64,000 nucleotides of DNA from Mytilus trossulus. Its lineage: Eukaryota. Below are positions 1 to 20,105 of this stretch, one piece after another. Each line of letters opens with the position of its first letter. The first letter of the stretch is position 1. Location of the stretch: positions 28,024,001-28,088,000 of the forward strand of contig NC_086379.1 of the NCBI RefSeq assembly GCF_036588685.1. Reading direction: 5' to 3'. The notes beneath the pieces were generated by a model. That model searched no databases and had not been told where the DNA came from. It worked only from the letters and a program-made list of their open reading frames with translations. The position numbers were made by a program, and so were the translations under genes.

Positions 1-60
1 GCCTAGATAATACAATTACTCTCTGCTATCCCTGTAATTATTGTCAATTATGACACAAAC

Positions 61-225
61 CTTCATATCGGAGGGAATTTTAACTTCAGATCCTGGCATG
101 AAGCTGTGTCTATGATTGACAGTTGGGCGCTCTGGGGGTACATCATCACAATGCTGGAATCTGATTGGTTTCTTAACTCCCCATAGAATGGTCACGGGAC
201 CTCTTATGACTAGGTTATTGTTGTC
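61..225 (-). CDS. RASSF2: RASSF exon (DNNNLVIRGPVTILWGVKKPIRFQHCDD...SDMK); the gene continues beyond the left edge
   Basis: TTCAG acceptor, GTTTGT donor, 55 codons in phase 0; resembles RASSF2/4 IVEGLLNISWGLRRPIRLQ. RA and SARAH domains are not in the window. Confidence 0.85.
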
Positions 226-1492
226 CTGAAATTACAAATATATTACTGTATATAATATCACATACAGAAGAACATTTCTAATAAATATTTTAATGCTGCA
301 ATATTGTGTTTTGTCAATTTGAAAATATGAATAAAACGTACAGTGATTACATAATTTATCAAAAGGAATTTTTATAAATATGACTATTCAAAAGAAGTTT
401 TTGAAAATCTACACAAAATTAGTATCAAATTTGACTAAATTTATTCTGATATTGAGCCTAAATATATATGCTTGATTTGGAGAGTAGACTGGATGTAATC
501 CTGTCTTATGTTGCTATACATTATACTATTCAAAGACCATATAAAACATACAAACAGTTCTATTGAGAACTATATAATTAATGAAACTGATTAATATGAT
601 ATTTTTTACTCCTTAAATATGATCTCAGGAAAGTCAATTCCCTAATTGGGTTCAGTTATTGGAAACCAAGTAGTATTCTTAAAACAACTAAGACTAGTAT
701 AAGTAACCACTCATTTATGTGGTAAGAACAAAAAGATTATAGCATCTTTGGTTCTGGCTTGAACATTCTTACAAGTACATGTAAACTACAAAATTAAATC
801 ATTTTTAACAAATATTTTATTAAAAGCAGTTTACTGGGATCTCTCTTTTCTTTCTACAGTTTTAAAAGGATATACATGTAATTTGATTAGAAGTTTCTAG
901 CATCAGTTAACCTTATTCCTGCAGAATTTAGTATTTCAAATGAAACCTAAACAGATATGTTAACTATTGTGGATAGCAATGTTGTCAGAATTCTGCCCCA
1001 TACTAGAAATTTGTTTTGTATTTTAAGGTATGGAAAGGGAACCTACTAAGAAGCATACAAAGTACATTTAAACAAACATGAAAGATAAAAGGACACAATA
1101 TGAAAGGGACACCTCAGTTAAACACTATTGATTTTCATATATTTATATAGTTTCAATGCAAATAACAACTCAGATATTTCAAACATATATTTATATTTTA
1201 CTTATTCAGAATAGAGATAATTATATGATATGAACAGATATAATTTTTCATTGGTAATACTTTTAACAAGAAAATATACTACATAACTAACATGTGTTAA
1301 CTAAAAACACCTTGTCAGAATTTCTGTCACATATTTAAATTAGGATCAATAAATAACAAAAAAATATCAATCATAATTAATATGCAATGTTTAATAAGTA
1401 ACAAAAAAATAATAAGCATTTCTTATATTATTCAATAAATACTTGACACGGTTTCTGACAAAATATGTAAATCAATCATGTTTTTTTTTTAA

Positions 1493-2241
1493 ACTTACAG
1501 TAAAAGCTGACACTGATTGTAATTTTTTTAATTACAGTAAAAGTTGACACTGATTGTATTTTTTTTTATTTACAGTAAAAGCTGATATAGATTGCCTTTT
1601 TGCTAACTGACAGTAAAAGCTGACACAGATTGTCTTTTTGTTGACTTACAGTAATAACTGACACTGACTGTCTTTTTGTTGACTTATAGTAAAAACTGAC
1701 ACTGATTGTCTTTTTGTTAACCTACAGTAAACGCTAACACAGATTGTCTTTTGTTGACCTACAGTAAAAGCTTACAGAGATTGTCTTTTGTTGACTTACA
1801 GTAAAAGCTGACACATATTGTCTTTTGTTGACTTACAGTAAAAGCTGACACTGATTGTCTTTTTGTTGACTTACAGTAAAAGATTACACTGATTGTCTTT
1901 TTGTTGGCTATCAGTAAAAGTTGATACTGATTGTCTTTTTGTGGACTTACAGTTAAAGCTGAGATTGTCTTTTTGTTAAAATACAGTAAAAGTTGACACA
2001 GATTGTCTTTTTTTTTACTTACAGTAAAAGCTAACTGATTGTCATTTGTAAACTTATGGTTGAAGCTGATTCAAATTGTCTTTTTGTAAACTTAAAGTAG
2101 AATCTGACACAGATTGTATTCTTGTTGACTTACAGTAGAACTTGACATATATGGAATTTTGGTAAAATTACAGTAGAAGCTGTCATCGACCCATTGTCAT
2201 TTTGTAAACTTACAGTAGAAGCTGACACAGATTGTCTTTTC
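1493..2241. repeat. ~38-bp minisatellite, 20 units, derived from the RASSF exon/intron boundary
   Basis: Consensus acttacagtaaaagctgacactgattgtctttttgttg; the last unit is the real exon end plus donor. Confidence 0.95.
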
Positions 2242-2298
2242 TTTCCTTTTTCTTGGTAGTATTCATTGTATGTTTTTATCTTGTTCAAAACTTCCTGT
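2214..2298 (-). CDS. RASSF2: RASSF shared exon (QEVLNKIKTYNEYYQEKGKKRQSVSAST)
   Basis: TTTTTCAG acceptor, GTAAGT donor; KTYNxYY resembles the RASSF2 N-terminal LKTYNLYY motif as recalled. Confidence 0.88.
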
Positions 2299-3475
2299 CT
2301 GAAAAAGAGAAGATAGTATTATGATATATGATTTAAAAGAAGACAATTTTCCTTCTAGATTCAATCAGAACAATGAGTAACTCTTTTCATTATCAGATAA
2401 CTTTGTTGTCACATAATTATATCACATGTAATTTAAGTCAAATACAAATGTATTGACATTGTGTCCACCAAACAGGTACATTGAGATCGGAAACCTCTTT
2501 GAGCATGAAAGCATCATGTATCTTCTGCAAATTTGCAATCAAAAACTCCTCATCTATCAGAAATTCTTGTTGATAGGGATGGAAGTAGGTTGTGGACTCT
2601 TACTCTGATGTTTAAAACCATAAGGGAATAACTTTGATGTAAATATTGGTGATATCATAAAATTTATGCTGGAACTCATTTTCTTATTTTTCATTATGAC
2701 CCAAAATAATTGAGTAGAATTTGATAATTCAATTCTAATATAATATATATATATGCTAATATACATGGTTCTTATCGTAAGTTTTAAAATGTGGACCAAA
2801 TTACAGATACACCTATAACAGTGATAAGGAAGTATATAAGTATTCATATTCATAAACATGAAATTTAAACTCTATACTTGAAAATAGGAGGTGCAATATA
2901 ATCTTAAACATCCAAGGCTAGATTTAAAATTTACAATACTTTTTTCAATGAATACAAAGCCTTTAAGACAAAATTTATGTCAGTCTAACTGGAAATTCAA
3001 TATTGATTGTGTGGTTAAATTGTCATCCAAATTTCTGAAAGATTTGACACAGAAAAATCAATATCCTTGTCTGATCCAAATTCAGTAACAGAAATAACAG
3101 CTAGACAAATTATAATGTAGATTTGTAGAGTACAAAGCTGTCAGGTTTAAAAACCTTTACATGATTACAAAAACAATTTATAATACCATAGCGAAAAACA
3201 AACTGATTTTACAGAAGAGAAAATAAGTCTTTTCTGTACCAACAGGAGAAGATCCATGATCAATATAAAGGGAAGATGTGGAGTTAATATCCAGAAACAG
3301 CAACTCACCAATATAAAAAAGCAGAAATGTCTTTATAATGCCAAGCTCTAAAATTCCCCCTAGTCCAAGTAGGATGCATGTGGAGATTGCCAAAGAAATG
3401 CTATCAACTACGAAAAAAAACTCCAAAGATGTGCCAGTAATAAAAGATTTCTATTGATTATAAATTTAATACAAG

Positions 3476-3603
3476 CAGTGGCGGATCCAAAACTTTTTGT
3501 AAGGGCTGACTGACCTAAGAGGGGGGGGGGGGGTTCTCCAGTCACACTTCAGTGAATATAATCAACCAAATCCCCCCCCCCCCCCCCTTTTGATCCACCC
3601 ATG
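3476..3603. mobile_element. MITE with CAG...ATG ends and 5-bp TSD ACAAG
   Basis: cagtggcggatc ... gatccacccatg imperfect TIRs, internal polyG/polyC, ACAAG on both flanks. Confidence 0.75.
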
Positions 3604-5113
3604 ACAAGTTCTTTGTGAATACAATCCTTCATTCTCTTTTTTTTTATTACTTGTAACTCCTATTTCTTGTTAAATAGATTTCTGGGTAATCTAATTGTTA
3701 TATCTTTTAGACTTTTACAATAGACTATCTTTATAACATCTACCCTAAAACGATTCAACCTTTTATATTCATTTTACCCTTCCATTTCAATACACAAAGT
3801 TAGTCTAAGTATTTAACAATCCATGGAAAGTAAACATGACGTTGTTCATGAAAGTTACGATAACATTCACATGTAATTAAATGAAGAGATGCTTAAAAGA
3901 TGACAGTTCATGACTTGCCAAAGGCGATAAGCCATGACTTGTTATATTTGAAGATTCTATCCTAATTTACTTATAATTTCTAGTACCTACATTTTGTATA
4001 GTTAAAAATAATGCTGAAGGCAGTTGTAATTCTTTAGTCAAAATCTCAATTTAGGTTAAACAGACATGACATGCAGAGAATCTTCAATTTGTAACTAATA
4101 TCTTTTCATGTAGACATTTACATATGAATAAAAAGACAGGTGCGACAATCGTCAATGATGCAATAGCCATTTAACAGAAATTAACCACAAAAAGTCAACA
4201 GTTTATCCTCATTGATAAACAAGTGTCCATAGTGTTTGTCTAACTCCTGGTGTACAAGCCTTAAGTCTGAATTAAGTGTACGTTCAATTTCATTATATTT
4301 TCCTTTGCTGTTTATTTACATTTTTCAACAAAGTTTCAAGTGTTACCAAATTGAAGTGGCATTCAATTTATTTTTGCTCTGTTTGCATATATGTACGAGG
4401 AAAGCAATCTTAGAAAATTGGGATAGGTCCTTCCCGAAAAAGCAAATTCATAAGCCATGTTTTTAACTTATGGGCAGCAATTCCACCTTAATTGCCCTTA
4501 TTTTATATACTGGTATTTTTTCCACATAAATGTCAGCTTATCCCTATAGCTACATGTAGTGTAAATTGCATTCCAGACCAGGTAATAACCAGGTACAAAC
4601 CACTCCATCATCAATGATAAACAATTGTTGTTTTTGTGTAATCCATCATCTAAACAGCTGACCACAAAGATAATGTGGTAGATTAACACCTATCATTACT
4701 AATACCCTTCAGCATAAAATACTAGTGAGCAGTATAGCACCTGCCTTGTAAGAGACATTGGAGGAAAGATAAAAAGAATTTTGAAAAGGAAATGACCATG
4801 ATCAAATGCATTTTTGTTTACAAAAACAGCAAATTTATAAGATCATTTAGTGTTTACTAGAAGTGTTTAGAATCAGGTAAACTATGTAAGATCTATATAT
4901 ATTAGGCAGGAAACCCCTAATTTTGGCAGGTGGTAAAAAAAATACCATTTGATTTTTTTTTAATTTGCAAAATAAGTTATTTCTTTTGGAATGAAATATG
5001 GCACCCCCAACACCAGCCTTTCCTTAAGAAAAAAGAAATTTTAAAAGTTTTTATGCAATAACTTTGTTTTAGAGGAATTGTATCTGATACACGCCCACTG
5101 TAACACCCCTTAA

Positions 5114-5321
5114 GGTGGTAGACCTAGTTAAGGGAAATAACTCTTAAAATCATCAGTACGTTTGTGTCAGCCATTTTCATAAATACGTTCTAAGCTTCTA
5201 GGATACATAGATTATTTTCAATCTGTTTCAGGTAAATGCTTAAAATACATAAATAAAATTTGACTATTACAAACGCATCACTGAATTAAAGAGTTATCTC
5301 CCTGGACCAAGGTCTACCCCC
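5114..5321. mobile_element. TTAA-flanked MITE (Kolobok-like)
   Basis: TIR ggtggtagacct...agggaaataactct / agagttatctccct...ggtctaccccc with TTAA on both sides. GG termini fit Kolobok better than piggyBac (inference). Confidence 0.8.
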
Positions 5322-5657
5322 TTAAAATTGCACCTGACCTCAGTATTTAACGCTCTTGTTCAGCATGTAACAATGTTCAGACCCTCCCTTAGCCAAACCA
5401 AATTAGCTGATGTCACTTGCAAAAAAAATTATAAAATAAATATAGAATAGTCAATTCTTTTCCTAGTGAAACACTTATCTTGTTTGTATCAAAATAACTT
5501 AAAAGTTAATGATGTATACAAGGTCCATATAATAATTGTTAAAACGCCTAACCACACACTTAATTATGTAAACAAACAAGAGTAAACATGACATTGCATG
5601 ATGGGTTGGTTTGCTTTTCATTAACCTTCAACGATAATGATGTGTTTTCTTACTTAC

Positions 5658-5707
5658 TTTTCTACATCTAAAATGGATTCATCTGGTATATCAATCCTAT
5701 CCATCAT
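5658..5707 (-). CDS. Candidate alternative first exon C of RASSF (MMDRIDIPDESILDVE)
   Basis: ATGATG at 5707, 16 codons, then a phase-2 AA|GTAAGT donor in frame with exon 2214-2298. Confidence 0.55.
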
Positions 5708-7830
5708 TACTATTGTCACAACACACAAAACACAATATTTCTTTTCTGAATATGAAACACACTACAAGGTGAAATTATACACATTTCTCATTCTTACGAT
5801 CCAGGAAGAATATGATATTGCTTAATTCATTTCCAAACTGAAACTCCACCTAGGAAACGAAACATTCCTGTGACGATTAAACCATAGGTATTTCACACAA
5901 AAATTTGCATTATACCGGTAAATGCTTTTATAATTATTTCCTCGATTGTCTTTAATGGCCTTTTAATACCGCAGGTCTACAGTTCATGATCTCATTCATT
6001 TGATTATGCATATAGATTATGAAAATTTAGCCTTCGTCAAACAGGTGAATTGCATGTTCAAAGGATGTTTTTTTATCTTTCCGTGTATATAGACCACCAC
6101 AGGTCTTATCAATGACCTAATCAATTTCCAATAATAGAACAAGAACTTGTCAAAAATATCTGTGATGTGTATTGCACAGGTCATAAGCTGTAATACTGAT
6201 CCAACAGATTGGGAACTAATCACAAAAGCAAGGAACTGATTGAAGAATAGCTGCACAGCATATTGGATATTATTATAATTATTGATTGATTCTATCTTTT
6301 ATGCAAGAAGTGCTGTTTGCTTGAAATGCAACAAGTTTTATAGCATTGTCAGTATTTTATAAAAAGTTAAATGAAAAAAAAAAATTCTAAATTTAATTTT
6401 AAAGCGATATCTTTTTTATGATTCTTGTAAAAATCTAAAATCAATAAATCAAATGCATTTCTTTACACAAAACAGGAAGTAATAGACCATAAAAATTATT
6501 GTTGCAATCTGCAGAAGCAATCTGCAATATAAAGTGAGACAAAAAAATAAAAATAATTTAAAATCTTTGCTAAGCCCCAAGGAGTATAATGTTAAAATTT
6601 CATAATCACCCATCAGCAAGAACAAACATCATCAAAAAAAAAACTCATCATGAAAAAAATTTCTACGAACGAGCTAAGAACACACCCTTGAACTTATTAT
6701 TACTTCAATACATGTATTTAAACCATATTCTATAACTTGTCTATTACAATTATTACAGTTTAATTTCTATAAGTCAGAATTAAATGCCATCATAGCATTT
6801 AAAATGTTTCTTTTCAAAGGATATGAACCAATAAACCAATATCAAACTTCAAATATTTGAAGATATACAAATAACTCAGTTTATTTTTAAATATTTAGCT
6901 TTGATTTCCTATTGGACACAGCAGGTATGCCCTAGAAATAGGTGTTTTTATCAACATTGATGTTATGTACACGAGGTTACTGAATAAACACTTACAAGAG
7001 AGGATTATGAGATAATGAATTAACCAAATATTTGCCGATATTTTTGACGAGTAGAAGGTAATCAAAACAGCTCTCCAGCATTTTTGATTAACAGATGCTT
7101 GTATTATATAAAAAATGTAATATTATTTCATTTTTAAGTGGAAAGTTAATGGTATACCCCTGAGTTATTGCAAAATGCAATGGAAGTAATTAGTATTTGA
7201 TGTTTTAACCTTAGATTTATGGAAATAGTGTGAGAGATGCCTGTTCCTTTAAAGAAAATGACTTTTCATATGCTGGCTTCACAAGATATAGCATACCTTA
7301 CCAGAATAAATGGGGAATGTGTTAATGGGACACAAATCATGGACAATGAGTCAATGATGATGTCCCAGCTTTCATATAATGTTATAAAGGAATATAACTC
7401 AAGAACTATAAAAGTGATGCTAACCTAATTTGTTCATGATTTGAGATTTGTACAAACAAGCATTGTAATAACTTTGCATAACATTTAGTTGAGACAAACT
7501 TAATTTAGAGAGTAATTATTCAACATGTTTTTCAATTTGTAAAGGGCCATAACTCTAGAAACGTAAAAGTGATGCCACCAAGATTCGCACTTGGTCTGTA
7601 TTTTGTGGTAATAAGCATTGTGTATAAGTTTCATTACATTTGGTTGAGGCAAACTTAAGTTAGAGAAAGGAAAGCAATTTTAGGATGTACGTAAATACAA
7701 ACAGACAAGGGTAAAATTTAATGCCCCCCTCTGCTACAGTTGGAGCAAAAAAATATTTCAATAAAATTAATTTTCCATATGAACATTTAATATGTTTTTT
7801 TGGCTTGCAATTATAAAAGCTGCATGTATA

Positions 7831-8372
7831 TAATCCCGGCGAGGGAAGAACCAAAAATTTGCGAAAGCAAATTTACAGATCTAACATTGTTGGGTTGATG
7901 TTTAGACGAGTTGTATATATATATATATATATATATGCAGCTTATATAATTATATAACTATTTATAAATATATAACTTGTCTAAACATCAACCTTGAGGC
8001 TGACAATGCTAGACAATGACAATGAATGTTAGATCTGTAAATTTGATTTTGCAAATTTTTTTCCAGGATTTGAACCCATTGCTACTGAGATATTGTGACA
8101 CTAAATCGCCTGCACAGTAACTGGTGCGCTAGACCACACAACCACTTGGGTTTCATAAAATGAAGCTTTCGGTGGCCGGGTGTTACCTTTCAACTTCAGT
8201 TTTAATCTAGCGTTGTACTACAGTACATGATATATAAGGCATGAAGATGTTATTTTTAAAGATCAGCTAAATTATCTAAAGTAAAGAATCCTTCAAATTA
8301 ATGTAAGATACAGTCACAGAAATAATTATATTTATAAGTACGTCTGAACCAGTGAAAATATATATATATATA
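7831..8372. mobile_element. Two tail-to-tail copies of a tRNA-head-containing repeat sitting in (TA)n
   Basis: 7831-7920 (+) is the inverted copy of 7970-8065; the minus copy has A-box/B-box-like tggtctagcg / ggttcaaatcc at 8080-8146; TA runs at 7914-7936 and 8357-8372. Confidence 0.65.
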
Positions 8373-8600
8373 CAAGTCTAATATGAAAACTAAGTTCAAA
8401 CCTATGATTGCTTTGGATAAAAAATGCAATTTTTATACTTGTGCATGTTAAACAAATTTTGTTGTAGAAGGATCTAATTTTTATACATGTGCATGTTAAA
8501 CAAATTTTGTTGTAGAAGGGTTTAAATACAGCACAAACAAAAAGAACAAAAAAGTTAAAAGTAAATTTTAACAAAACATGAGGTGCATACAAATTTGTGT

Positions 8601-8643
8601 ACACCAAATCCGGATGTCGACAATAAATGTCTCTTCAGTGATG
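8601..8643 (-). ncRNA. Degenerate type I hammerhead ribozyme (CUGAAGA family)
   Basis: Minus strand: cauca CUGAAGA gaca-uuuau-uguc GACA uccgga UU uggug; GAAA is mutated to GACA. Confidence 0.6.
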
Positions 8644-8961
8644 TATATATACATGTATATACGGTATACCAGTATGCAAAATAATCAAATTATATTGGTT
8701 GTATTTGTAAGTTAATGTTGTTGTTTCATTTTGCATTTAGATTGATATAAGAAAATAAAACATTGTGATAATTTCCCTGTCCATAGAATTAAGACTTTCA
8801 TACATGAATCTCACTTTACTATTTATTGTTTATCAAGGAAGTATTGGTCTAAAGATAGCTCACTCTTCTGCTTTCATAGCTCTGCCGATAGTAAAAAAAT
8901 ATCCTAGTTTCATCATAAAACAATGTAGTCAATTTTTTGTTACGCCTTAATATTTTAAAAC

Positions 8962-9510
8962 AATAAACTCATTATAGAAACGAGGATTAAAATTTTGTAT
9001 GCAAGATGCCTGTTTGGTCTAGGCCTAAAATAAAATATTGTTTGTTTCCCCCAATCCCGACCGACCCTGCAAAAACAGTCCTACTCACAAAATTTTATTG
9101 TCAAAACTAAGTCAAATATTATTTTATTCATTTCCAATTTGCAGGCTTGCTGGATCTACCGAGATTGTTCTAGCCTTTAGGAAAAAATAAAATTATTTCC
9201 CTACCTACCTACCCATACCTGGCTTGGCCTGGTTGGGATTGGGGGAAAAAACAATATATTAGTTTAGGCCCTATAATAGACTCATCAGTGACATAAGAAT
9301 CAAAAAGTCAAACATGCCAAATAAAGTTTTAAGTTGAAAAGCATTTCAGAAAATAAAACTCTGAAAGGTGTTGGTGAATACAGGTTGACTTCTAATCCTG
9401 GGATAAATTCTGTAGTATTTTGAATATTTCAAAAATTTTGAAACAAGCTTATTTATAATTATGACAATGTCTCATGGTCTTTGCAATATCCTGCTGGCAC
9501 CACTAGTAGA
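8962..9510 (-). mobile_element. Decayed retrozyme copy whose hammerhead is split by a MITE
   Basis: Reverse-complement similarity to 22996-23400; CTGATGA core on the minus strand at about 9282-9288. Confidence 0.7.
9022..9271. mobile_element. MITE with ~37-bp TIRs and TA TSD (Tc1/mariner-like)
   Basis: ggcctaaaataaaatattgtttgtttcccccaatccc ... gggattgggggaaaaaacaatatattagtttaggccc with TA on both sides. Confidence 0.8.
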
Positions 9511-9530
9511 AGAAATTTCAATCATTAAAA

Positions 9531-9788
9531 AACAAGAATGTGTCCTCAGTACAAGGATGCTCCATCCGCACTATTATTTTATATGTTTAATGGACCATTA
9601 AAATGGGGGAAAATCTCTAATTTGGCTTTACAATTATCATATCATAGGGAAAATGTATACTAAGTTTCAAGTTGATTGAACTTCAACTTCATCAAAAACT
9701 ACCTCGACCAAAAACTTTAACCTGAAGCAGGACGAACGGACCGATGCACAGACCAGAAAACATAAGGCCCATAAATGGTGCATAAAAA
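9531..9788 (+). mobile_element. Non-autonomous Helentron/HINE-like repeat; further copies at 42796-43103 (+, with a GACG microsatellite) and 59187-59460 (-)
   Basis: Shared aacaagaatgtgtcc start, aagtttcaagttgattggacttcaacttcatcaa core, ggacg microsatellite and A-rich insertion sites across three copies. The class is inferred. Confidence 0.7.
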
Positions 9789-11956
9789 TGCTACAATCCC
9801 CGGAAGCAAGTATATAAATGTTTAAAGTAAGAACTGTGCTAACGGATGATTGAGTGAAAATAAAAATCATGTCCTGTTACCCAACAAACATTCAAGGTAC
9901 TCGATATGTTCTTCACTGTCACTCATATAATAATTTGTTTACAGTGAACATAAAAAAAACTGGTTCCATTTAAACCAAGATTAATATTGTATTATTTTCT
10001 CCCTGATTCAATTTCTGCCATATAAAATACATTGTACATGTATAATAAATATAAATATGTTTCTTTTATTCTTAAAATATCTGACTGTACAAAACTATTG
10101 GGTTTTTCCAGAGTTTCAATTGAAAACACAGAATAATCTCTCCGAGATATTTTTCAGGTTGAAAGTTTTAAAATTAAAAAAAAAAGTCTCTGAACTTGTC
10201 ATAAATATTAGGACACTATATTAATTTGGGTAAGACCATTGGGATATAATTTCAATCATAACATACTTGCATTGGTGAACTAAAATATATAATCATGATC
10301 CAGATGATTAATTATCAGATTTCAAGCTTAATATTTTATTAGCTCAACTAGATGCATTTACATAATCCATGTAATCAGAGGCAAGCAGGACCAAATAATT
10401 AAATATGCAAGAAATTGCAACCATCTTTATTTCATCACTTTCAAGATATTGTTTTCTTCAAAAACTTGATAAATTGTAATATCCCTTGTTTTTTTATAAA
10501 AAGCAATTAACTGGTCTGATCTTAACATTGGTATTTTTAATACTGAATTGAATAACAAATGGCTTTACATCATCTAAATAGGTCCAATGCATGTATATAT
10601 TTGTTTAATCATATTTGTAAGTGCATCAAGACTAACTTAAATCATGTGCTACTTAGATACCGGGACAAGCAGATGAAAAACAGTAAAAGTTGTACTAGAA
10701 AATTAAGCATGTCTGATACTCTTTTGGTTAAATGTACATGTGACAAATCTGTTTATCAAAGATCTAAAGTACATATCAGGGCTGCTTTTAAAGTCTCATG
10801 CATTTAGCGTGGTTACTCACTCAATTTGGTCAATCAAACAGAAATAGGAAAAAACAAATTTTATACAAGTGGGAGGTTAAGCTAGCTAAAAACCAGGCAT
10901 ACCGTAATCCATAATATTCTTCAGAAAAACTCTGAACTATGTTGGTTATTGTCCATGCATCCAAAATGTGCGAGACTCACGCATGTTCATGCTTTTTTTG
11001 TGACATTTTCCTTTGATGTATTATTTTTTCTTTTTGATGTTTTCAATTTCGGTCAAATCTCACGCATTTGCTTCATGAAAAGATGGCAGAACGAACTGAC
11101 ATTATGGTCCATATATCAATATATCTGACAACTGTAGAATTTTTGATCCCTTGATGGTCATCTGGAGTCAATTAACATACCCCATTACTCTTAAACATAG
11201 GTCTTTTTCTGGAATTCTAGGTAAAAGTATAGTATCGCATCATGCACATTGGTCAAATGATTTCATGTTTAGGAGGGTAGTTACATACATGTATATACAT
11301 TGGTATGCTGACAAAATTCTAGAAGAATTTGGCGTGATCATACATTGTACACAATCCACCAGCTACATGTACTGGTGGAATACAAGCAAAGCCCCTGATA
11401 CACTGACCCAATATTTATACATGCAATTTGTACACATGTTGTACATTGTACATTAATTAGTACATGAAGAGTTGGGACCTGATGAATGATAATCAAATTC
11501 ATCCTCTTGGTAAAATCTGGACTAAAACATTATAGTATTTTCATAAATAGTATTCAATGGTAACATTACCTTCTAAAAAATAAAAATACTAAATATAGGC
11601 TAAAGCAGTTGCCTGAAGATTTCATAATTTTCGCTATAATTATGAAATTTTCAGGCAAATAAATTATTTCCCAAATTTTTCCGCTATAATTATGAAATCT
11701 TCAGGTTACTGTGGCTGAAGGCTGTGACATGGATGCTAAATGTATAACCTTTGAATAGTTTAAAGGAGTAGTTTTCATCAAATTACACAGGATAGAGAAA
11801 AATGACAGAATATCGTTAGTTAAATTTCTCAGTAAGATTTCAGACTTTTTTTTAGCAAAAAAAACAAATTAGAGTTTTATTTTTTTAACTCAACTGCCAT
11901 CATTTTCCTTTTATAGTCAAAGTTTGGGCTCTTTCCAAAATTATAATACAACGCAC

Positions 11957-12126
11957 CTTTCCATCGGTCTTTTGCTCATTATTTTCTTTTGTTGGCGAGA
12001 TGAATCAGGAACAAAGATGAACCAAAGAAGGAAATAAAATAAATTGCTCAAAGAGTCATAAAAACCCTGCCAAAACGACGTGAATTGTGACCAAGTATCC
12101 GTCTTCGTTGTTTCCTGTTTTGCCAT
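11957..12126 (-). CDS. Candidate alternative first exon B of RASSF (MAKQETTKTDTWSQFTSFWQGFYDSLSNLFYFLLWFIFVPDSSRQQKKIMSKRPME)
   Basis: 56 open codons from ATG 12126 to a phase-2 AG|GTGCGT donor; CpG-richer promoter-like DNA lies immediately upstream (12200-12340). Confidence 0.6.
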
Positions 12127-12199
12127 TACCGGTGCATACACAAATAAGTGTGAAACGGGAGATAACTCTAACTGCACATAAATTATGTCGGAACAAAAA

Positions 12200-12340
12200 T
12201 AACGTGTCTTCAACGACGTCCGCGTCAAAACTGACGGACGCAAAATGGGGGACAGTCAGGGTCACTTTCTATCTATCTTCATATTTCCGCACTCAGTCAC
12301 AACTTTGACTATTACGTGCCGTTGCATGCGTGCATGCTTT
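12200..12340 (-). promoter_or_regulatory. Candidate internal promoter of RASSF isoform B
   Basis: Local CpG enrichment, NRF1-like gcatgcgtgcatgc and a tacgtg motif, just upstream of candidate exon B. Confidence 0.4.
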
Positions 12341-13484
12341 TTTACAATTAAAAAGAAATAAATTTGCAGTAATATTTCGTTACATTGCAATGGTGCTTAG
12401 AAAAAATAAATAAAGTAAAAATATAACAGTGATTTAATTTTTTTTGTGGATTGTTATCCTATGTATATTTCTTGTTAAAACTATGTACATGTTATGCATT
12501 TTTTAGAATATTTGTGAAAGAGCAGATATAGAAATCTGCTCTTTGAAGCCGTCGACTGTTGTACAAAGGATTGCTGATGTAGGAAGTAGGTTCCATTGTA
12601 CTATTGTATGTGGATAAAATGAAAACTTGTATGCATCGTTTTTTAAAGAGAAAAGACATTGAGAAAAATATACTTAATATATTTAAAGTAATATGAATTA
12701 TCAATCAAAAAGAAAGTGAAATAATCTTGTTCCTACCAGGGATGTCTTACAAATCCTTGTTCTAGTCCTATAATCTATGAACTCGGGGGCACTGATTATT
12801 TTCTATTTCTGATTTTGCTATTTTCATGATTTTTCTTTTTTATTATCAATGTGCCAAAAATTAAAAATTAAAATATTAACATGAAAATGTTAAATAGTGA
12901 ATATATATCCTGTATAATGCGAAGGCATATTATAGGACTAATCCTAGCAATTTTCATTACCATTGTGTTGCTTTATCTTCTTCAACGGTTAGGGTTTCAT
13001 TTGTATATCTATCGCTTTGTTTTTGTATTTGTATGGGGTACATGGGGGGGGGGGGGGGAGAGGGAAAGGGGGAACTTCTTGTTTAACTGAAGTTTCAAAC
13101 ATTTCTAAATGATTTATATGATACAATTTGTATAAAGGATGTGTTGATAAACCCTTATCCTAGTTTAGATTTGAGAGCTCTGTACAAACATGTTTATTCA
13201 CCACACATGTTTTATGTGCCTGGCCCAAGTTCAGTATTGTGTGTTGGTTGCTTTGTCATTCTGCTGAATGTCGTATCGGACCTATAGTTGTTTACCTATC
13301 CCGGCTCGCCCAACGGCCTCTGATGGATGCCCAAGTTGTCCTATTGGCAATCATACCACTTAGTTTTTACATATACATGCATAATAATAGTTGGTATGCA
13401 AGTCTCTGGTCCCATGCACTACGTTTTTTCAAAACTTAAAACAAAAATAGATAATGTGAACATCTAGTCAACAAAAATACTCAC

Positions 13485-13777
13485 TCTTTCGATGAAATAG
13501 TTTTAATTTTCATTGGAGGCTGAGATTTTGGCCTGTTTATTTTGTTCACATGAGTTCTTTTAGCAACTGGAGTAATGCTTATATCGTTTTTGCTATTTCC
13601 AAATTCATAAACCATAACTGGTGAACCTCCATCGTGTCCGTTATAAATACTCCCAGTTATATTGTCTAATTGATCACTTTTTCTGAAGTTTGCCGGTGAT
13701 GCGTATCCATATCCCATCATCTGAGGTCCAAATAATGCTGCATAGCACGGCTTGTGACAGTACGGCTTTCTGTCATG
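13485..13777 (-). CDS. RASSF2: LIM-RASSF gene, exon 3 (HDRKPYCHKPCYAALFGP...KTISSK), end of LIM plus linker
   Basis: TTCCAG acceptor; PYCHKPCYAALFGP is the CRIP-like LIM end; phase-2 GA|GTGAGT donor joins exon 2214-2298 in frame. Confidence 0.9.
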
Positions 13778-14939
13778 CTGGAAGTAAAGAAAAAAAACAA
13801 ATATTATAATAGATATAAAGAAAATGATAAACTTGAAGCAATACAATACTTGTATCCATTGGATTTCTCGAAAAAATGTATGTGTTATATATATATAGAT
13901 CCTTTAGAGAAAAGGGTGGACTCACTGAAAATTTGGAATCAACTTTTATAGTATTTAACCTTGATTGAATGGTACACCAATGTTTCTATAATATATGTAC
14001 ATATATTAAGTCTTTTTTTATACAATATTATACATAGCTTCGTATTTGTGTGTGTCTCTATGAGACGTGTCGAGTACAGTACAAAATTATTAACCAGGAA
14101 TCACCTGACGAAAGAAACGTAAAGCCAGTATAAATGGAATCTTTGAGTAGCATCCACCCATGTTATTCTCCAAGAAACGACTAGTGTGTTCACTTCTGTG
14201 TTATCACAAGACGTCTGTACGGAGCAATCTTATTCTAAAACAGATTGCATCATGTGCATAGCGGTATTGATTGTTTAAATGAGTGTGATGTTCTTCACTA
14301 AGTTTGAAGCAATACTTATTCAGTGTTTTCCAATATTCTATCTATAGCACTGTCAAGTAATCAGATGACTCAGTGGGTACTTGTAATGTTGTTATTTCTT
14401 AAAATCAATAAGTATAATTCAATAATTGATGTAGATGATTCCCGTGTGATGCCACATATATAGCATTTTCTGTACAGACACAAATCAGAGAAAACAAATT
14501 AAAAGCACACTCAATTTATAATTCGTAGCGTACATCATATATGTATATGGAGGTAAAAGTGTATAAAGATATAAGAATCTATTGTTTTACATTGTGTCAT
14601 TATGGTGACTTTCATAGTTCACTATGCGGTATAGGTTTTGCTCATTGTTGAATGTCGCACAGGAACCTATAGTAATCAAAATTATATGTAATTTGGTTTC
14701 TGGTGAAACCTGTTGTTTCATTGGTAATGGTACCAAATCTTCTTATGGATAAGATTTGGTACAAGGTCAAATAGTCAACAACACGACCAAAGAGCAGAAA
14801 ACAGCAGAAGGCCAGCAGTGGGTCTTCAATACAGCGAGAATCTTCTTCAAGGAAAAAAAAACCCGCATACTCTATGGCATGGTTAAACAAATGCCGTATG
14901 TACATTTAATATACTATACTTAAAGTTTTTGTTCATTAC

Positions 14940-15034
14940 CTCAGCATGTTGACCAGCGGACAGTATTTTACCACATTCTTCACATCGTAAACAGTTCGGA
15001 TGCCAGTTCTTTCCTAAAGAGGTTTTTCTTTCAG
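14940..15034 (-). CDS. RASSF2: LIM-RASSF gene, exon 2 (AERKTSLGKNWHPNCLRCEECGKILSAGQHAE)
   Basis: TTACAG acceptor, GTAATG donor, LIM core WHxxCxxCxxC, phases 1/0 consistent with both neighbours. Confidence 0.92.
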
Positions 15035-15068
15035 CTGTAAAAATAGTTTATCTAAGTAAAAATATCAA

Positions 15069-15680
15069 AGGAGATGTGGTATGAGTGTCAATAAGACAAC
15101 TCTCCATCCAAGTCACAATTTGTAAAAGTAAACCATTATAGGTCAAAGTACGGTCTTCAACACCGAGCTTGGTTCACACAGAACAGCAAGCTATAAAGGG
15201 TCCTAAAGAATAACTTGTGTTTATAAACCATTATATATATAGCCTATAAAATCACTTTGAAGAAACCGTTTGAATAAAAATGAATGTAAAGTTCTATAAG
15301 ACTTCATGTATTTACAAGACTAGCACTTATACAACAGTTCAAGTTTGAGTCGTCTTTTCGGGCTGATAAACATGAACTAATCATCGTGTCGTTTATAAAC
15401 TTAATTTAAAGAAAGTAAACGAGTCTTACTGAAATAATTATACATAAGAAAACTCATAAGCACTCATACTGATTCATGGTTTGTCATTCATGACTATTAT
15501 TGACGCATCAATGTCCTCAGCAACCGGTTCCAGAGAATATAACGGTAACAAACTAAACTAGATATAGGAAGATGTGGTGTGAGTGCCAATGAGACAACTC
15601 TCCATCCAAACAACAATTCAAAAATTAAACCATTATAGGTTAAAGTACGGCCTTCAACACGGAGCCTTGGCTCACATATG
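15069..15680 (+). repeat. Two copies of an abundant short interspersed repeat (gaagatgtggtatgattgccaatgagacaactctcc...); others near 14600-14750 (-), 31755-31803 (-), 32245-32440, 42640, 61150-61262, 61620-61900
   Basis: Recurrent, clearly similar sequence throughout the window. Confidence 0.8.
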
Positions 15681-17747
15681 TAATTAAACAGATAAAGATT
15701 GTTCCAATGTTTGCCGATCAATCGACCGACCTAATCAAAATGTTTTCTCTCATGACAGATCTCTATGCAACAGAAACTCCTCAAATTTCAAAATATGTCA
15801 ATTCGGTATTTATATAGATTAAAAATTGTACAAATGGAATGAATATGCACTTAAATATGAACAGCGTTGTTATATTTGTTATTATCAATATTTAATTTTA
15901 TCTCTATTGAAGATTTTGAGTTTCATAACGAAAATAATGAAGGCCCCCGGCAAAACAAGCAGAGGATTTCATAAGTCTGAGATTTCCGTCTCAATTTCGT
16001 AAAGGGAATTTTTATGAGAACTGTAATTTAACTGTATATGAGATAACACACAGAGGGTAAATTAATTTACATTTTCATTAAAATCACCGTGTAAAAGATA
16101 GAAGGTGTTACATAAATCAAATTTAAATACAATTTAGTAGATTTGATATTATCTGTTTGCTTAGGGCAAACTGTCATATCAAACTCAAACAACTTTATAA
16201 TCTGAAATTTCAACCTAAACTGCATCAGGTAAAAGTATTTGAACTTAATAAACAGGTGACTTGTAAAGGAGTCATTTTCATTTCACAGATGACAGTTTGT
16301 ATATGTGTATATGTATCCTTGCAGAAAATGGACAAAGTAAGATGTCAACACAAACAACATGAAGACAAATGACATATTTAAAAAACAAAGCCATGTCCAG
16401 TCTGGTGTATCAATTAAGACCACTACAGGTCGAGACATGAAAGGCATTAAACTGACAAGAATACGCTAATTTATATTTTATTGCTAAATAGTGAATATGT
16501 TTTAGGAAAATAGACCACAAATGATTCTGCATGTCTTTGCTAAATATTTGTTTGATGAAAGAGAGATCTGATAAATATATATAAAGATCTAGAACGACAG
16601 TTTCTGCCAAACGAAAATCGTTAATCGTACATTGCAGGAGAGGCAGACAAGTCAAATGCAAAGCTATATATTCTAATATTTCTAGTGACCATCTGTAATT
16701 AAATATTGTAACTACTTATTTGTTTGTAAATATGGAGAAAATATGTTTAACCTTATATGACTGAATGATAGTATTTTACATCCAATAGCACATTCTTTTC
16801 ACACGATTGATATACCTCAATTTTACAAATTACCAACAAAAATACCAACAAAACCAGTAAAAATACATTCATCTTTTGAGAATCGAGCATTGTGATTACA
16901 AAAAAAGTGTAATAACTTGTACACAATAATGATGATTTAGAGGGAAATTTAGAAATGAAGAAAATTGACAAAATATATCCTGCCTTTTTTATGTGAAAAT
17001 GTGAAATAGGTTTAAGACCTATCCCAATGTATATGATATTTTTTTACTTCCCATACTCGCATCCGTTCTCACATTTATGATACATGTATAGTTGACCTTA
17101 AAAGTACACGAAATTATACTATCATCATTTATTCAATAACAAATGAAATTTTACGAGACCATATGATCGTTTCCATATCATTTACTCGGCTCATTTTAAC
17201 ATTCAAGGATCTTGTTTATAGTGTATACACCCATATTTCTTTCAATTATGTTTAAAACCGTATATGTCATTCTAAATGTGTCTTTTTAAGAAAGAACAAC
17301 AAAATTAAAGTGAATAAGCAGACCAAGGACAGTAAAAGGGTTAAACAAATGATAGTTTTTCAGAAATATCTTGCGTGTTCTTTTCTTATAAAAGCCCATG
17401 ATATAAAACGACAAGGTTTTATAGCGAAGATTCCTGTTTTAAGTTCTGATATAAACATTGTTAAATACTACTCCATTGATACAAACTAATGTTTAAATCC
17501 GCAAATGGAATAAAATTTAAACCAAATAAATTATTAAATTGGACTTGTAAATGAACGCGGAACAAGTAGAACTCAAACTTCGCACCCTACCAGAAGTTCG
17601 TATTTTACTCTGGATTTAATTGCATGCCAAAAATATCAAAATAATTATTTTTATTTCACCGACACGATCCATGATTTTAACCACCCGTATAAAAGTCACA
17701 CCTAAGTAAACATGACCCAAATTTAATCAAAATCTACTTTTACTTAC

Positions 17748-17790
17748 CGAAATATACTGGTTTACCACACTTTTGACAAGTATTGTTCAT
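17748..17790 (-). CDS. RASSF2: LIM-RASSF gene, coding exon 1 (MNNTCQKCGKPVYF), start of a CRIP-type LIM domain
   Basis: ATG at 17790, CxxC motif, phase-1 GTAAGT donor that fits the next exon. The symbol is family-level (RASSF2/4/6 class). Confidence 0.88.
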
Positions 17791-18617
17791 TCTAGTGTCA
17801 TTGCCTTCTTAATTCCTCACTATTGTGACGATTTGATGCAGTAATCCATCAAAACATTTGTCAAATACAACATAATATTGATCTACCGGTGTCCCTTTGA
17901 TACTGCAATACACTAGAGTTAGAGTTCGATCCAATGTGAATGGTGTTTATATTTCTGTCGGGTCAACAATTGTATTTATAAATCTCTAGGCCGGTATGTC
18001 CTTTATCACAATTCCTATTTGGTGATTATCCATTTTGCAACTCCTATTGTATTTGATAAAAGTAGTGAAGTGGGGTTTAAATTTGCTTAAAAATATTTTC
18101 ATTCAAGTGTAAAATATACCCAAGATCAAGGTGAATATGACTTAAAGGTATATGAAATAACTACGAAACGTCTCTCATCCTTGTAAAATATGTTTTCTTT
18201 GTGACTTTTAAATTGTTATTGTATGATACACCACATAAAACGTGTACCTGTTTTGTCCTATTATTTAATACATTTTGATATAGTTATCTGTTAATGAATT
18301 AAGATTAGCACGTTTCGCCCATAAAATGGATCTCAAACTACATGTATAAATAAGTGAAATGAGTACAAGATTCTATCGACGGAGAAAATCACTTCTAATA
18401 TGTTAAGCTAAGAATTTTAGTGGATTGGCAATCAATTAAAATTTGACAAAATTATTGCTTGACTGCACTTGGACAAACAGTTTTCGGCGTATTTAGTGCA
18501 TCCTAACTCCACCCAACAAATGTATTCGATAGCGATGAAATCAGTATACCCCTTAGCCTCTTTACTAATCTCTCCTGAATAGCGATTAACTATTCGTTAT
18601 GATATTTTTTTAAATAA

Positions 18618-18825
18618 TAAAATTGAGAATGGAAATGGGGAATGTGTCAAAGAGACAACAACCCTACCAAATAAAAAAACACAACAGCAGAAGGTCACCA
18701 ACAGGTCTTCAATGTAGCGAGAAATTCCCGCACCCGGAGGCGTCCTTCGGCTGGCCCCTAAACAAATATATACTAGTTCAGTGATGATGAACGCCATACT
18801 AATTTCCAATTGTACACAAGAAACA
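18618..18825 (+). repeat. Interspersed repeat (aattgagaatggaaatggggaatgtgtcaaagagacaac...); second copy at 20688-20778
   Basis: Two near-identical copies plus fragments at about 14770-14850 and 50605-50660. Confidence 0.8.
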
Positions 18826-20105
18826 CTGTAATGGTTTTTTTTTCCTTTTATTTGAAGATTTACACTTAAGATCTCCTTCTACTATATGATACATAAAAAA
18901 AGAACTTTTTTCCCCAATCTATAATGACCAATTACAGGAACTATTAAAACCAAGATTTCCTTTTCATGTAGATAAAAACAAGTCGCAAAACCAAGTTTTG
19001 AGTTTGAGAATTATGGTCTCACGTCAATCCGGAAAGGACCATCAGACGCTGCAAAATTTGAACGTTACTCTTTGATATCCAGGGACCACTGTTGTGGTAT
19101 TGACTAAATTTTATGATTAATTCTACGGTCAGTGATGCATATTTGATATTTTTTTCCCAAATTTATGTTTTAACACTTCAAAATGTTGTTACAAACCGAA
19201 TGAAAAAGTAACGAAAAATAGCTTTGAAGTAGAATAAATGTTCTATAATATCATTTGCAGTATTTGATCCTTCCGGGGAAAAGAGTATCGAGTATTTGTT
19301 CCAACCGGAACAGCTATTGTGTCATTGTGTATAACAAAGTATCATGTGGAAAATATGTAATGTGTAAAATAAATTATGCATAGACAATTGTACACATCCT
19401 ATGGTTTTGTTTTGTTAATTTCAGTAAAATTAAAGTCTTTTAAAAGACTTCTATGTGTAAATTGATTAGGGAACATGCAATTGGTTCGTGCCTCTTTCTT
19501 GTTAACGACACCTGAAACATCCCGACATACAACAACATAATTATATGCATTTTGCTAGTGGTCAAAGGAAAGAAAGTCTACTCAGATAATACATCGCGGT
19601 CTAGAATTTAGAAATATATTTTTAACTAAATGTGAAAAACTTGCCAAAATAGTAGTTATGACAGTGTTTGTGTTTTAACTTAGGGAAGTCGCAACATAAA
19701 CCACAAAACAGTGAATCAAACAATAAATTGCCTTCTTTTGTCATTTTAGTCGATACATACAATGCAAATCTAATTGACAAAGTGTCCTTATACAATATGA
19801 CACAAGTGTTTTGTGCATGTAGTGTGTTTAAAAAGAAACAAGATGACAAGCGGATAATGAATGAAAGATCAATGATAATGTACATTACATAATAACAAAA
19901 ATTGAAAACTAGTTGCAAAGTAAAGAAACACGAAATAGAATAGTGTTTCAAGGGAAGTAATTCAAACTTAATTCTAAGTTGATAATACAAATTTCTTGTT
20001 AACAGTTTGTTCTTTTATATATTAGTTACACTTAGTTAGTTTGTTTGTTGATTTTTTGTTTGGTTTCTTTCTCTTTTTGGTTGGTTATCTGTATTTGTTT
20101 TATTC

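What the first reader, a model, noticed from the sequence alone, without database searches (positions are those of the whole stretch)
2214..17790. Swappable N-terminus system in RASSF: three mutually exclusive phase-2 entries into one exon
Seen: the shared exon needs a phase-2 donor. Three upstream ATG-initiated routes each end in a good phase-2 donor: the 3-exon LIM module (GA|GTGAGT, 13485), a 56-codon exon (AG|GTGCGT, 11957) and a 16-codon exon (AA|GTAAGT, 5658). Established: Drosophila RASSF carries an N-terminal LIM domain, whereas vertebrate RASSF2/4 do not. Inference: one locus makes LIM-bearing, hydrophobic-leader and vertebrate-like short forms from alternative promoters. This offers a direct route for evolutionary LIM loss.
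Basis: partly seen in the sequence, partly recalled or inferred. Interest (0 to 1): 0.8.

Follow-up and report, generated by a model that had tools for sequence, protein, structure and literature searches.

The report
Mussel RASSF gene's alternative first exons
A mussel gene for a Ras/Hippo-pathway adaptor really does start from several alternative first exons that give it different front ends, but public gene annotations already record these forms.

Summary
On the minus strand, a three-exon CRIP-type LIM module (17790-13485), a 56-codon exon B (12126-11957) and a 16-codon exon C (5707-5658) each start with ATG. Each ends in a phase-2 donor that fits the acceptor of the shared exon 2298-2214. 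RA and SARAH exons lie below the window start.

The locus is the classical RASSF gene of Mytilus trossulus. XP_063444247.1 (isoform X1) is the LIM route. XP_063444248.1 (isoform X2) is the B route. The C route is M. edulis model CAG2198409.1. It also occurs in intronless transcript-contig proteins of another mytilid and of an oyster.

In spliced contigs, the exon upstream of the shared exon ends in AG in 2 of 4 runs. That fits B, not LIM3 or C. One contig stops exactly at the C donor.

Not shown: separate transcription starts, translation of B's hydrophobic leader (an M. edulis model starts at a later Met), and any link to vertebrate LIM loss. The design parallels RASSF1A/1C.

Verdict: real but already annotated, so low novelty.

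The parts
17748..17790 (-). LIM exon 1. ATG at 17790, 14 codons + 1 nt, donor G|GTAAGT.
   Evidence: Sequence, coordinates. The translation is an exact substring of P0170 (XP_063444247.1).
14940..15034 (-). LIM exon 2 (95 nt, ends in phase 0).
   Evidence: Sequence. Pfam LIM 33 bits against a cut-off of 22.9. Exact substring of P0170.
13485..13777 (-). LIM exon 3: the last zinc-binding residues plus about 78 codons of linker. Donor GA|GTGAGT, phase 2. If the donor is read through, a stop codon follows at once.
   Evidence: Sequence. Exact substring of P0170. In P0170 and in transcript-derived P0001 the sequence continues directly into the shared exon.
14105..14161 (-). Candidate fourth first exon: 19 codons, donor CAG|GTGATT, phase 0. 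It would join LIM exon 3.
   Evidence: Exact substring of M. edulis model CAG2198407.1 = P0176.
11957..12126 (-). Exon B, coding part: 56 codons + 2 nt, donor AG|GTGCGT, phase 2.
   Evidence: Sequence. Exact substring of P0169 (XP_063444248.1, isoform X2). Contigs of runs X1 and X3 align 2 nt past the acceptor, as expected for an upstream exon ending in AG.
12127..12264 (-). Unique CpG-rich stretch just upstream of the B ATG. Putative 5'UTR and core promoter of the B route.
   Evidence: 11957-12264 holds 16 CpG with o/e 1.24 and GC 0.41, against o/e 0.50 for 1-20000. It has a single copy in the genome. That transcription starts here is inferred.
12265..12644 (.). Interspersed repeat of about 380 bp that abuts the B upstream region.
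   Evidence: 40 scored copies out of 108 candidates, at 90-96% identity. Extent from blastn.
5658..5707 (-). Exon C, coding part: 16 codons + 2 nt, donor AA|GTAAGT, phase 2.
   Evidence: Sequence. Exact substring of M. edulis CAG2198409.1 = P0048. A contig of run X4 ends its match exactly at 5658.
5708..6000 (-). 5' extension of exon C, colinear with the genome in contigs.
   Evidence: X4 record 29 matches 5658-6000 and runs past 6000. X1 record 7 matches 5715-5934. No in-frame acceptor lies in the 18 open codons upstream of the ATG.
2214..2298 (-). Shared exon: 85 nt, enters in phase 2 and leaves in phase 0.
   Evidence: Sequence. Exact substring of P0170 and P0169. The joint 2214->225 is present in contigs of 4 of 4 runs.
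61..225 (-). Next constant exon (55 codons), holding a conserved N-terminal box of the family.
   Evidence: Sequence. Exact substring of 9 of 12 Mytilus proteins tested. Several invariant alignment columns fall in it.
1493..2240 (.). Minisatellite that repeats the 3' end of the shared exon together with its donor.
   Evidence: Tandem Repeats Finder: period 38, 19.9 copies, 79% matches.

Best explanation
The region is the 5' half of the single classical (RA + SARAH) RASSF gene of Mytilus trossulus, on the minus strand. The gene has one constant body. It begins with the shared exon 2298-2214 and exon 225-61. Six more exons lie below the window start, down to the stop about 7.5 kb beyond it.

At least three alternative first-exon modules each carry their own ATG:
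(A) three exons encoding a CRIP-type LIM domain plus a linker;
(B) one CpG-rich exon, 1.36 kb downstream of the last LIM exon;
(C) one short exon a further 6.2 kb downstream.

All three end in phase 2 and use the same acceptor at 2298. B and C have no in-frame acceptor of their own, so the modules cannot be combined. The choice of transcription start therefore decides the N-terminus.

The result is a constant Ras-binding and Hippo/MST-binding core with or without a zinc-finger interaction module. Vertebrate RASSF1A/1C use the same design principle.

Shown: the exons, the phases, their identity with public isoforms, and cDNA-type evidence for the LIM and C forms in relatives.
Inferred: independent promoters, which Met is used in B, and any functional difference between the forms.
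For: Locus identity:
- The window lies on a contig of 85,406,108 bases. That equals the contig length recorded for XP_063444247.1 and XP_063444248.1 of M. trossulus.
- All exon translations are exact substrings of these two proteins. tblastn maps their remaining exons to -839..-7549 relative to the window start.

Domains:
- P0170: LIM 51.3 bits, RA 64.4 bits, Nore1-SARAH 18.3 bits.
- P0169 and P0048: RA and SARAH, no LIM.

LIM route:
- P0001, P0171, P0172 and P0175 are 463 aa with the LIM3-to-shared-exon junction. They sit on Logan contigs of 2.0-2.7 kb.
- The coding exons span about 25 kb of genome, so these contigs must be intronless.

B route: 377-aa models exist in M. trossulus, M. edulis and M. 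galloprovincialis.

C route:
- P0048 (M. edulis).
- P0194 (335 aa on a 1414-nt contig, another mytilid).
- P0079 (339 aa on a 1577-nt contig, oyster-like).
- C. virginica isoform X3, P0076.

Contigs:
- The joint 2214->225 is seen in 4 of 4 runs.
- X1 record 1 and X3 record 17 match up to 2300. The upstream exon therefore ends in AG, as B does. LIM3 ends GA and C ends AA.
- X4 record 29 ends exactly at 5658.

Other:
- No in-frame acceptors lie upstream of the B or C ATG.
- CpG o/e is 1.24 at B.
Against: - No read or contig from this species was laid on the LIM or B exons. The single read-laying run covered only 1-6000.
- None of the four runs is recorded as RNA. Their identity as cDNA rests on the spliced joint.
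- The B assignment in X1 and X3 rests on 2 matched bases. Any other exon ending in AG would fit as well.
- The 29-nt tail of the X4 contig beyond 5658 was not shown.
- Contig depths cannot rank the isoforms.
- No B-type protein came from a transcript contig. All five B-type sequences seen are genome-annotation models.
- RefSeq does not list a C isoform for M. trossulus among the named cluster members seen.
- In C. virginica isoform X1, a C-like segment sits inside the LIM form. Mutual exclusion is therefore not universal in bivalves.
Confidence: 0.85

Rival explanations
1. Exon B is a real first exon, but its hydrophobic leader is not made. Translation would start at the later Met near the end of exon B, or the transcript would start downstream of the first ATG. 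B transcripts would then encode an almost N-terminus-less RASSF.
For: - M. edulis model CAG2198408.1 (P0177, 304 aa) starts at that later Met.
- No relative of the leader was found among cluster representatives, neither in a region search nor with the exon ORF alone. Pfam gives nothing better than E 0.33.
- Two mini-uORFs lie 11 and 53 nt upstream of the first ATG.
- The hydrophobic run is short: mean Kyte-Doolittle 1.34 over 19 residues and 1.85 over 15.
Against: - RefSeq and an older M. galloprovincialis annotation both give the 377-aa form in three species.
- The first ATG has G at -3 and G at +4.
- The frame stays open for all 56 codons.
- The blank searches mean little. B-type proteins are hidden in a cluster whose representative is a LIM form.
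Confidence: 0.45
2. The LIM exons form an independent CRIP-like gene that ends at the stop codon overlapping the 13485 donor, and they are not part of RASSF.
For: - Read-through of the donor gives an immediate stop.
- The LIM domain's best solved relative is CRIP (1iml, E 7.4e-27).
- Proteins P0173 and P0174 end at that stop.
Against: - P0173 and P0174 also begin in the preceding intron. They come from unspliced DNA or pre-mRNA.
- Full-length LIM-RA-SARAH ORFs sit on intronless contigs.
- By my manual count of the precomputed Pfam column, 108 of the 120 listed relatives carry LIM. The named ones come from molluscs, annelids, nemerteans and arthropods.
Confidence: 0.03
3. Exon C is not used in M. 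trossulus. The M. edulis model and the contig end at 5658 would be annotation or assembly accidents.
For: - No C isoform of M. trossulus was among the named cluster members.
- Contig depth over 5601-6000 is low or zero in the four runs.
- The pattern scan finds 6 other unsupported candidates of the same kind.
Against: - The 16 codons are identical between the M. trossulus genome and the M. edulis model.
- Homologous starts are found in cDNA-type proteins of another mytilid (P0194) and an oyster-like species (P0079). They align with C.
- The contig match ends at exactly the predicted donor base.
Confidence: 0.1

Closest known systems
RefSeq isoforms X1 (XP_063444247.1, 464 aa) and X2 (XP_063444248.1, 377 aa) of M. 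trossulus 'ras association domain-containing protein 2-like', and M. edulis models CAG2198407-9 'RASSF2_4'
   Same: They are this locus or its orthologue. X1 is the LIM route and X2 is the B route. CAG2198409.1 is the C route. Exon translations are exact substrings.
   Different: Nothing differs for X1 and X2. The C route is not among the M. trossulus RefSeq names seen. The M. edulis models lack a 25-residue internal stretch and start B at a later Met.
Human RASSF1A / RASSF1C (and, from recall, RASSF5 NORE1A / RAPL)
   Same: One classical RASSF locus, with alternative promoter use and first exons. The long form carries an N-terminal zinc-binding domain and the short form lacks it, while the RA + SARAH core stays constant. 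Sources: PMC2965177 (abstract in a search listing); PMC2586335 (Fig. 3 legend); PMC4695899 (passage saying that RASSF1A and Nore1 harbour C1 and the other C-RASSFs do not).
   Different: The zinc module there is a C1 domain, not LIM. The exon structure was not compared here. The RASSF5 isoform pair is recalled, not read.
Drosophila RASSF (CG4656)
   Same: N-terminal LIM, with C-terminal RA and SARAH (PMC1828611 passage; PMC2586335 passage). Drosophila proteins of about 800 aa with LIM + RA are among the hits.
   Different: The domain figure of PMC1828611 is in a supplement that was not seen.
Crassostrea virginica RASSF2-like isoforms X1 (LIM, 503 aa) and X3 (no LIM, 348 aa)
   Same: The same gene family, with a LIM-bearing and a short form from one locus. 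The short form starts with a segment that aligns with Mytilus exon C.
   Different: In isoform X1 the C-like segment is internal, after the LIM linker. The Mytilus LIM forms skip it. No B-like leader is present.
CRIP (cysteine-rich intestinal protein, PDB 1iml)
   Same: The LIM module is most similar to CRIP: E 7.4e-27 over residues 5-77.
   Different: CRIP is a free-standing protein of about 76 residues. Here the module is the N-terminus of a 464-aa RASSF.

Membership tests
Classical (C-terminal) RASSF, dRASSF / RASSF2-4-6 type | Ras-association (RA) domain in the middle or C-terminal part | tested here: met
   PF00788 scores 64.4 bits (P0170), 65.1 (P0169) and 67.0 (P0048), against a cut-off of 21. 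The RA exon lies outside the window in L002. There is also a match to the RASSF5 RA chain 3ddc_B, E 3.5e-5.
Classical (C-terminal) RASSF, dRASSF / RASSF2-4-6 type | SARAH domain at the C-terminal end | tested here: inconclusive
   PF16517 matches the last ~40 residues, but below the cut-off of 21 for the Mytilus proteins: 18.3, 19.0 and 19.2 bits. It is above the cut-off for P0194 (21.5) and for the oyster proteins (26.8, 27.5). Position and alignment are conserved.
Classical (C-terminal) RASSF, dRASSF / RASSF2-4-6 type | Binding of Hippo/MST kinase through SARAH, and of Ras-family GTPases through RA | not testable with these tools
   Needs binding assays.
LIM-RASSF (protostome dRASSF architecture) | One N-terminal LIM domain on the same polypeptide as RA + SARAH | tested here: met
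   PF00412 scores 51.3 bits at residues 5-61 of P0170. The junction into the shared exon is seen in intronless contig proteins.
Alternative-promoter isoform system (RASSF1A/1C type) | Mutually exclusive first exons, each with its own ATG, joining one common acceptor | tested here: met
   Phases and acceptor. Public isoforms. No in-frame acceptors upstream of B or C.
Alternative-promoter isoform system (RASSF1A/1C type) | Separate transcription start sites or promoters | not testable with these tools
   The only hints are indirect: CpG o/e 1.24 at B, and contigs colinear for more than 340 nt upstream of the C donor. CAGE or 5'RACE is needed.
CRIP (free-standing single-LIM protein) | Small protein consisting of one LIM domain plus a short tail | tested here: not met
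   The LIM sequence is CRIP-like, but the reading frame continues into RASSF exons in all full-length proteins seen.
Membrane-anchored protein (for the B form) | A hydrophobic helix long enough to span or anchor in a membrane | tested here: inconclusive
   The best 19-residue window has mean Kyte-Doolittle 1.34. That is under the threshold of about 1.6, which I recall rather than read. The best 15-residue window scores 1.85. No dedicated predictor was available.

The most novel reading that the evidence does not exclude
The switch between a LIM-bearing form and a short C-type form would be old. It is seen in mytilids and oysters, so it would predate their split. The short form's start would be homologous to the N-terminus of vertebrate RASSF2/4/6. 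Vertebrate LIM-less RASSFs would then descend from fixation of the internal promoter form after loss of the upstream LIM exons. On top of this, Mytilus would have gained exon B as a lineage-specific, CpG-rich, perhaps dominant promoter next to a repeat insertion. Its leader would tether RASSF to membranes.
Probability: 0.2. Interest if true: 0.5.

Novelty: already known. Interest (0 to 1): 0.2.

Why it matters
This is a sound example of how a signalling adaptor changes its interaction module by promoter choice while keeping its Ras-binding and Hippo-kinase-binding core. It shows that protostome RASSF genes can behave like vertebrate RASSF1.

For genome annotation it adds little. The LIM and B forms are RefSeq isoforms of this very locus, and the C form is in the M. 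edulis annotation.

Two points remain open and testable:
- whether the B leader is translated and what it does;
- whether the short form is the ancestor of LIM-less vertebrate RASSF2/4/6.

I found no paper on either point. Searches listed no paper on RASSF isoforms in bivalves, nor on LIM-less forms in invertebrates. That is a statement about listings and a few passages, not a full reading.

Tried and rejected
Steps that led nowhere:
- Conservation of the B leader outside the M. edulis species complex. A region search of residues 1-57 of P0169 and a search with the exon ORF alone both found no candidate. This is weak evidence. Only cluster representatives are searched, and the known B-type proteins sit in a cluster represented by a LIM form.
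A metagenome scan with a LIM3-exon fragment of another mytilid (P0178) gave 286 pattern matches, none confirmed.
- Rfam and tRNA scans of 1-20000, to type the two repeats. Both returned nothing.
- Ranking the isoforms by contig depth. Rejected, because the tool states that contig depth cannot rank parts of a gene.
- The idea that LIM3 or B splices in frame into exon C, as in the oyster X1 form. No AG acceptor in the right frame lies within the open codons upstream of the C or B ATG. Contigs are colinear across that stretch.
- A comparison with vertebrate or other deuterostome RASSF N-termini. It could not be made. The word 'vertebrate-like' therefore rests on recall.

Exons were searched one by one. 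All whole proteins used were database proteins returned by tools.


Full report
WHAT IS THERE. The window is G000:C7:28024001-28088000 of a 1.30-Gb genome. The contig is 85,406,108 bases long. Reading the minus strand confirms each element of the finding:
- LIM exon 1: 17790-17748.
- LIM exon 2: 15034-14940.
- LIM exon 3: 13777-13485, donor GA|GTGAGT, phase 2.
- Exon B: 12126-11957, 56 codons + 2 nt, donor AG|GTGCGT.
- Exon C: 5707-5658, 16 codons + 2 nt, donor AA|GTAAGT.
- Shared exon: 2298-2214. It needs two carried bases and leaves in phase 0.
- Next exon: 225-61.

I fetched 30 kb below the window start. The rest of the gene lies there: an exon with a conserved basic stretch, three RA-domain exons and two SARAH exons. 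The stop is about 7.5 kb below the window start. Exon-by-exon Pfam scans give LIM for exon 2 and RA for a downstream exon. They give nothing for B, for the LIM3 linker or for the 225-61 exon.

IDENTITY OF THE LOCUS. A search of 1.84 billion representative proteins with the LIM3 exon alone returned 45 hits at E <= 0.001. The best was P0001 (463 aa, 91% identical), in which the exon runs straight into the shared exon. Its 90% cluster has 17 members, 9 of them named. Among these are M. trossulus XP_063444247.1 (isoform X1, 464 aa, P0170) and XP_063444248.1 (isoform X2, 377 aa, P0169). Both are recorded on a contig of 85,406,108 bases, the length of the window's contig.

Whole-codon translations of the exons were tested as exact substrings:
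- LIM1, LIM2, LIM3 and the shared exon are substrings of P0170.
- B and the shared exon are substrings of P0169.
- C is a substring of M. edulis CAG2198409.1 (P0048).

The genome is therefore Mytilus trossulus. Its C route is an existing M. edulis model. Pfam on the whole database proteins gives LIM + RA + SARAH for X1 and RA + SARAH without LIM for the B and C forms. SARAH is just under the cut-off in Mytilus and above it in P0194 and in the oyster proteins. The LIM domain is closest to CRIP among solved structures, and the RA domain matches RASSF5.

EVIDENCE THAT THE FORMS ARE REAL mRNAs.
- LIM form. P0001, P0171, P0172 and P0175 are complete 463-aa ORFs on Logan contigs of 2.0-2.7 kb. The coding exons span about 25 kb of genome, so such contigs must be intronless. 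They belong to a congener that is about 91% identical in the LIM3 exon.
- C form. P0194 (335 aa, 1414-nt contig, from a mytilid about 76% identical) and P0079 (339 aa, 1577-nt contig, oyster-like) start with a segment that aligns with exon C. They continue into the shared exon. C. virginica isoform X3 (P0076) is of the same kind.
- B form. I saw it only in genome-annotation models: 377 aa in M. trossulus, M. edulis and M. galloprovincialis (two entries), plus a 304-aa M. edulis model starting at the later Met of exon B.

READS. The run search returned 4 runs with small shares (0.05-0.06), none recorded as RNA. That share is about what the three exons make up of 1-6000. Laying all four on 1-6000 gave these results:
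- A joint from 2214 to 225 in contigs of 4 of 4 runs. The runs therefore contain spliced cDNA, and the donor of the shared exon is confirmed.
- X1 record 1 and X3 record 17 match up to 2300, two bases past the acceptor, and then continue on unlike sequence (140 and 22 nt). The intron ends ...cag. The upstream exon in those contigs therefore ends in AG. This fits B (...AAAG) but not LIM3 (...AAGA) or C (...AAAA). Any other exon ending in AG would fit too.
- The X4 contig stops at 2298, one base short of its own end, which is uninformative. The X2 contig ends at 2294.
- X4 record 29 (about 95% identical, so another species) matches 6000-5658. It ends exactly at the predicted C donor with 29 unplaced bases beyond it, and it runs past 6000 at the other side. 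X1 record 7 covers 5715-5934.

Exon C therefore has a 5' extension of more than 340 nt that is colinear with the genome, as expected for a first exon. The tail sequences were not listed, so the partner exons were not read directly. The LIM and B exons lie outside the stretch that could be laid.

CAN THE MODULES BE COMBINED? Within the open codons upstream of the C ATG (18) and of the B ATG (43), no AG acceptor would keep a phase-2 donor in frame. In Mytilus the three modules are thus alternative, not additive. This is not universal. C. virginica isoform X1 contains the C-like segment internally after the LIM linker. The Saccostrea LIM form (P0053) lacks the segment, and the matching short form (P0079) starts with it.

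PROMOTER HINTS AND THE B LEADER. The stretch 11957-12264 has 16 CpG, with o/e 1.24 and GC 0.41. That is the highest in 1-20000, where overall o/e is 0.50. It is single-copy. It directly abuts a repeat of about 380 bp (12265-12644), with 40 scored copies of 108 candidates at 90-96% identity. The C region is single-copy.

The B peptide has a hydrophobic run of about 15 residues. Mean Kyte-Doolittle is 1.85 over 15 residues but 1.34 over 19. No Pfam match is better than E 0.33. No relative was found among cluster representatives. The value of those blanks is limited, because the B-type proteins are hidden under a LIM-form representative. Between the three M. edulis-complex species the leader differs at 1-2 of 56 residues, which is too close to be informative. 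Whether the leader is translated therefore stays open, and one annotation prefers the later Met.

CHANCE. The bare pattern (an ATG, an open frame of at least 16 codons, and a phase-2 donor matching at least 5 of 7 consensus positions) occurs 9 times on the minus strand of 2299-18200. Random sequences give 2.4 +/- 1.6. Six of the nine have no outside support.

COMPARISON WITH WHAT IS KNOWN.
- Drosophila RASSF has an N-terminal LIM, with RA and SARAH (PMC1828611 and PMC2586335, passages read).
- By my manual count of the precomputed Pfam column, 108 of the 120 best listed relatives of P0001 carry LIM. The named ones come from molluscs, annelids, nemerteans and arthropods. The list is cut at 120 of 251, so it says nothing about deuterostomes.
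- Vertebrate RASSF1 makes a zinc-finger-bearing (C1) form and a C1-less form by alternative promoters. Sources: PMC2965177 (abstract in a listing); PMC2586335 (Fig. 3 legend); PMC4695899 (passage).

The mussel locus thus works like RASSF1A/1C with LIM in place of C1. It is a member of the dRASSF-type family.

Six paper searches listed nothing on RASSF isoforms in bivalves or on LIM-less invertebrate forms. At the level of sequence annotation, however, the forms are public.

VERDICT. It is unproven for separate promoters, for translation of the B leader and for the evolutionary step to vertebrates. Novelty: already known. Earlier notes of this scan on the same window concern the minisatellite and the B exon. 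They agree with what I saw and were used only as pointers.

Noticed in passing
window 14105-14161 (minus): A 19-codon ATG exon with a good start context (aacATGG) and donor CAG|GTGATT in phase 0. It is identical to the first exon of M. edulis model CAG2198407.1 (P0176), which joins it to LIM exon 3 and so gives half a LIM domain. It begins M-G-x-x-x-S. From recall this is an N-myristoylation-type start, with a Cys at position 4. It is a possible fourth N-terminus.
   Followed up: partly
window 12265-12644: Interspersed repeat of about 380 bp, with 40 scored copies of 108 candidates at 90-96% identity. It ends 139 nt upstream of the exon B ATG, next to the CpG-rich unique stretch. It might have contributed to the B promoter. 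There was no Rfam or tRNA match.
   Followed up: partly
window 5110-5326: Repeat of about 217 bp, with 866 first-look candidates at 96-98% identity. It also matches its own reverse strand weakly (about 68%), which is MITE-like. Contigs of all four runs pile up on it with many different flanks.
   Followed up: partly
window 1493-2240: Minisatellite (period 38, 19.9 copies) whose unit repeats the last bases of the shared exon plus its GTAAGT donor. All four spliced contigs use the first donor, at 2214. Some contigs show copy-number joints inside the array.
   Followed up: partly
window 17801-17790 and 12137-12126 (minus): Both the LIM1 ATG and the B ATG are preceded by a 3-4 codon mini-uORF. Each starts 11 nt upstream, and its stop codon overlaps the main ATG. 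This may be coincidence or a shared translational control.
   Followed up: no
L002 (about 840-1040 bases below the window start, minus strand): All three M. edulis models (P0048, P0176, P0177) lack a 25-residue stretch of this exon. The stretch is present in the RefSeq proteins and in the M. trossulus genome. This is either an intra-exonic splice or an annotation artefact.
   Followed up: no
about 17.2-19.1 kb below the window start (L003, minus strand): Long open frames of 418 and 184 codons, with a Cys/His-rich start. From recall this looks like a B-box/TRIM-NHL type gene. It would be the next gene downstream of RASSF.
   Followed up: no
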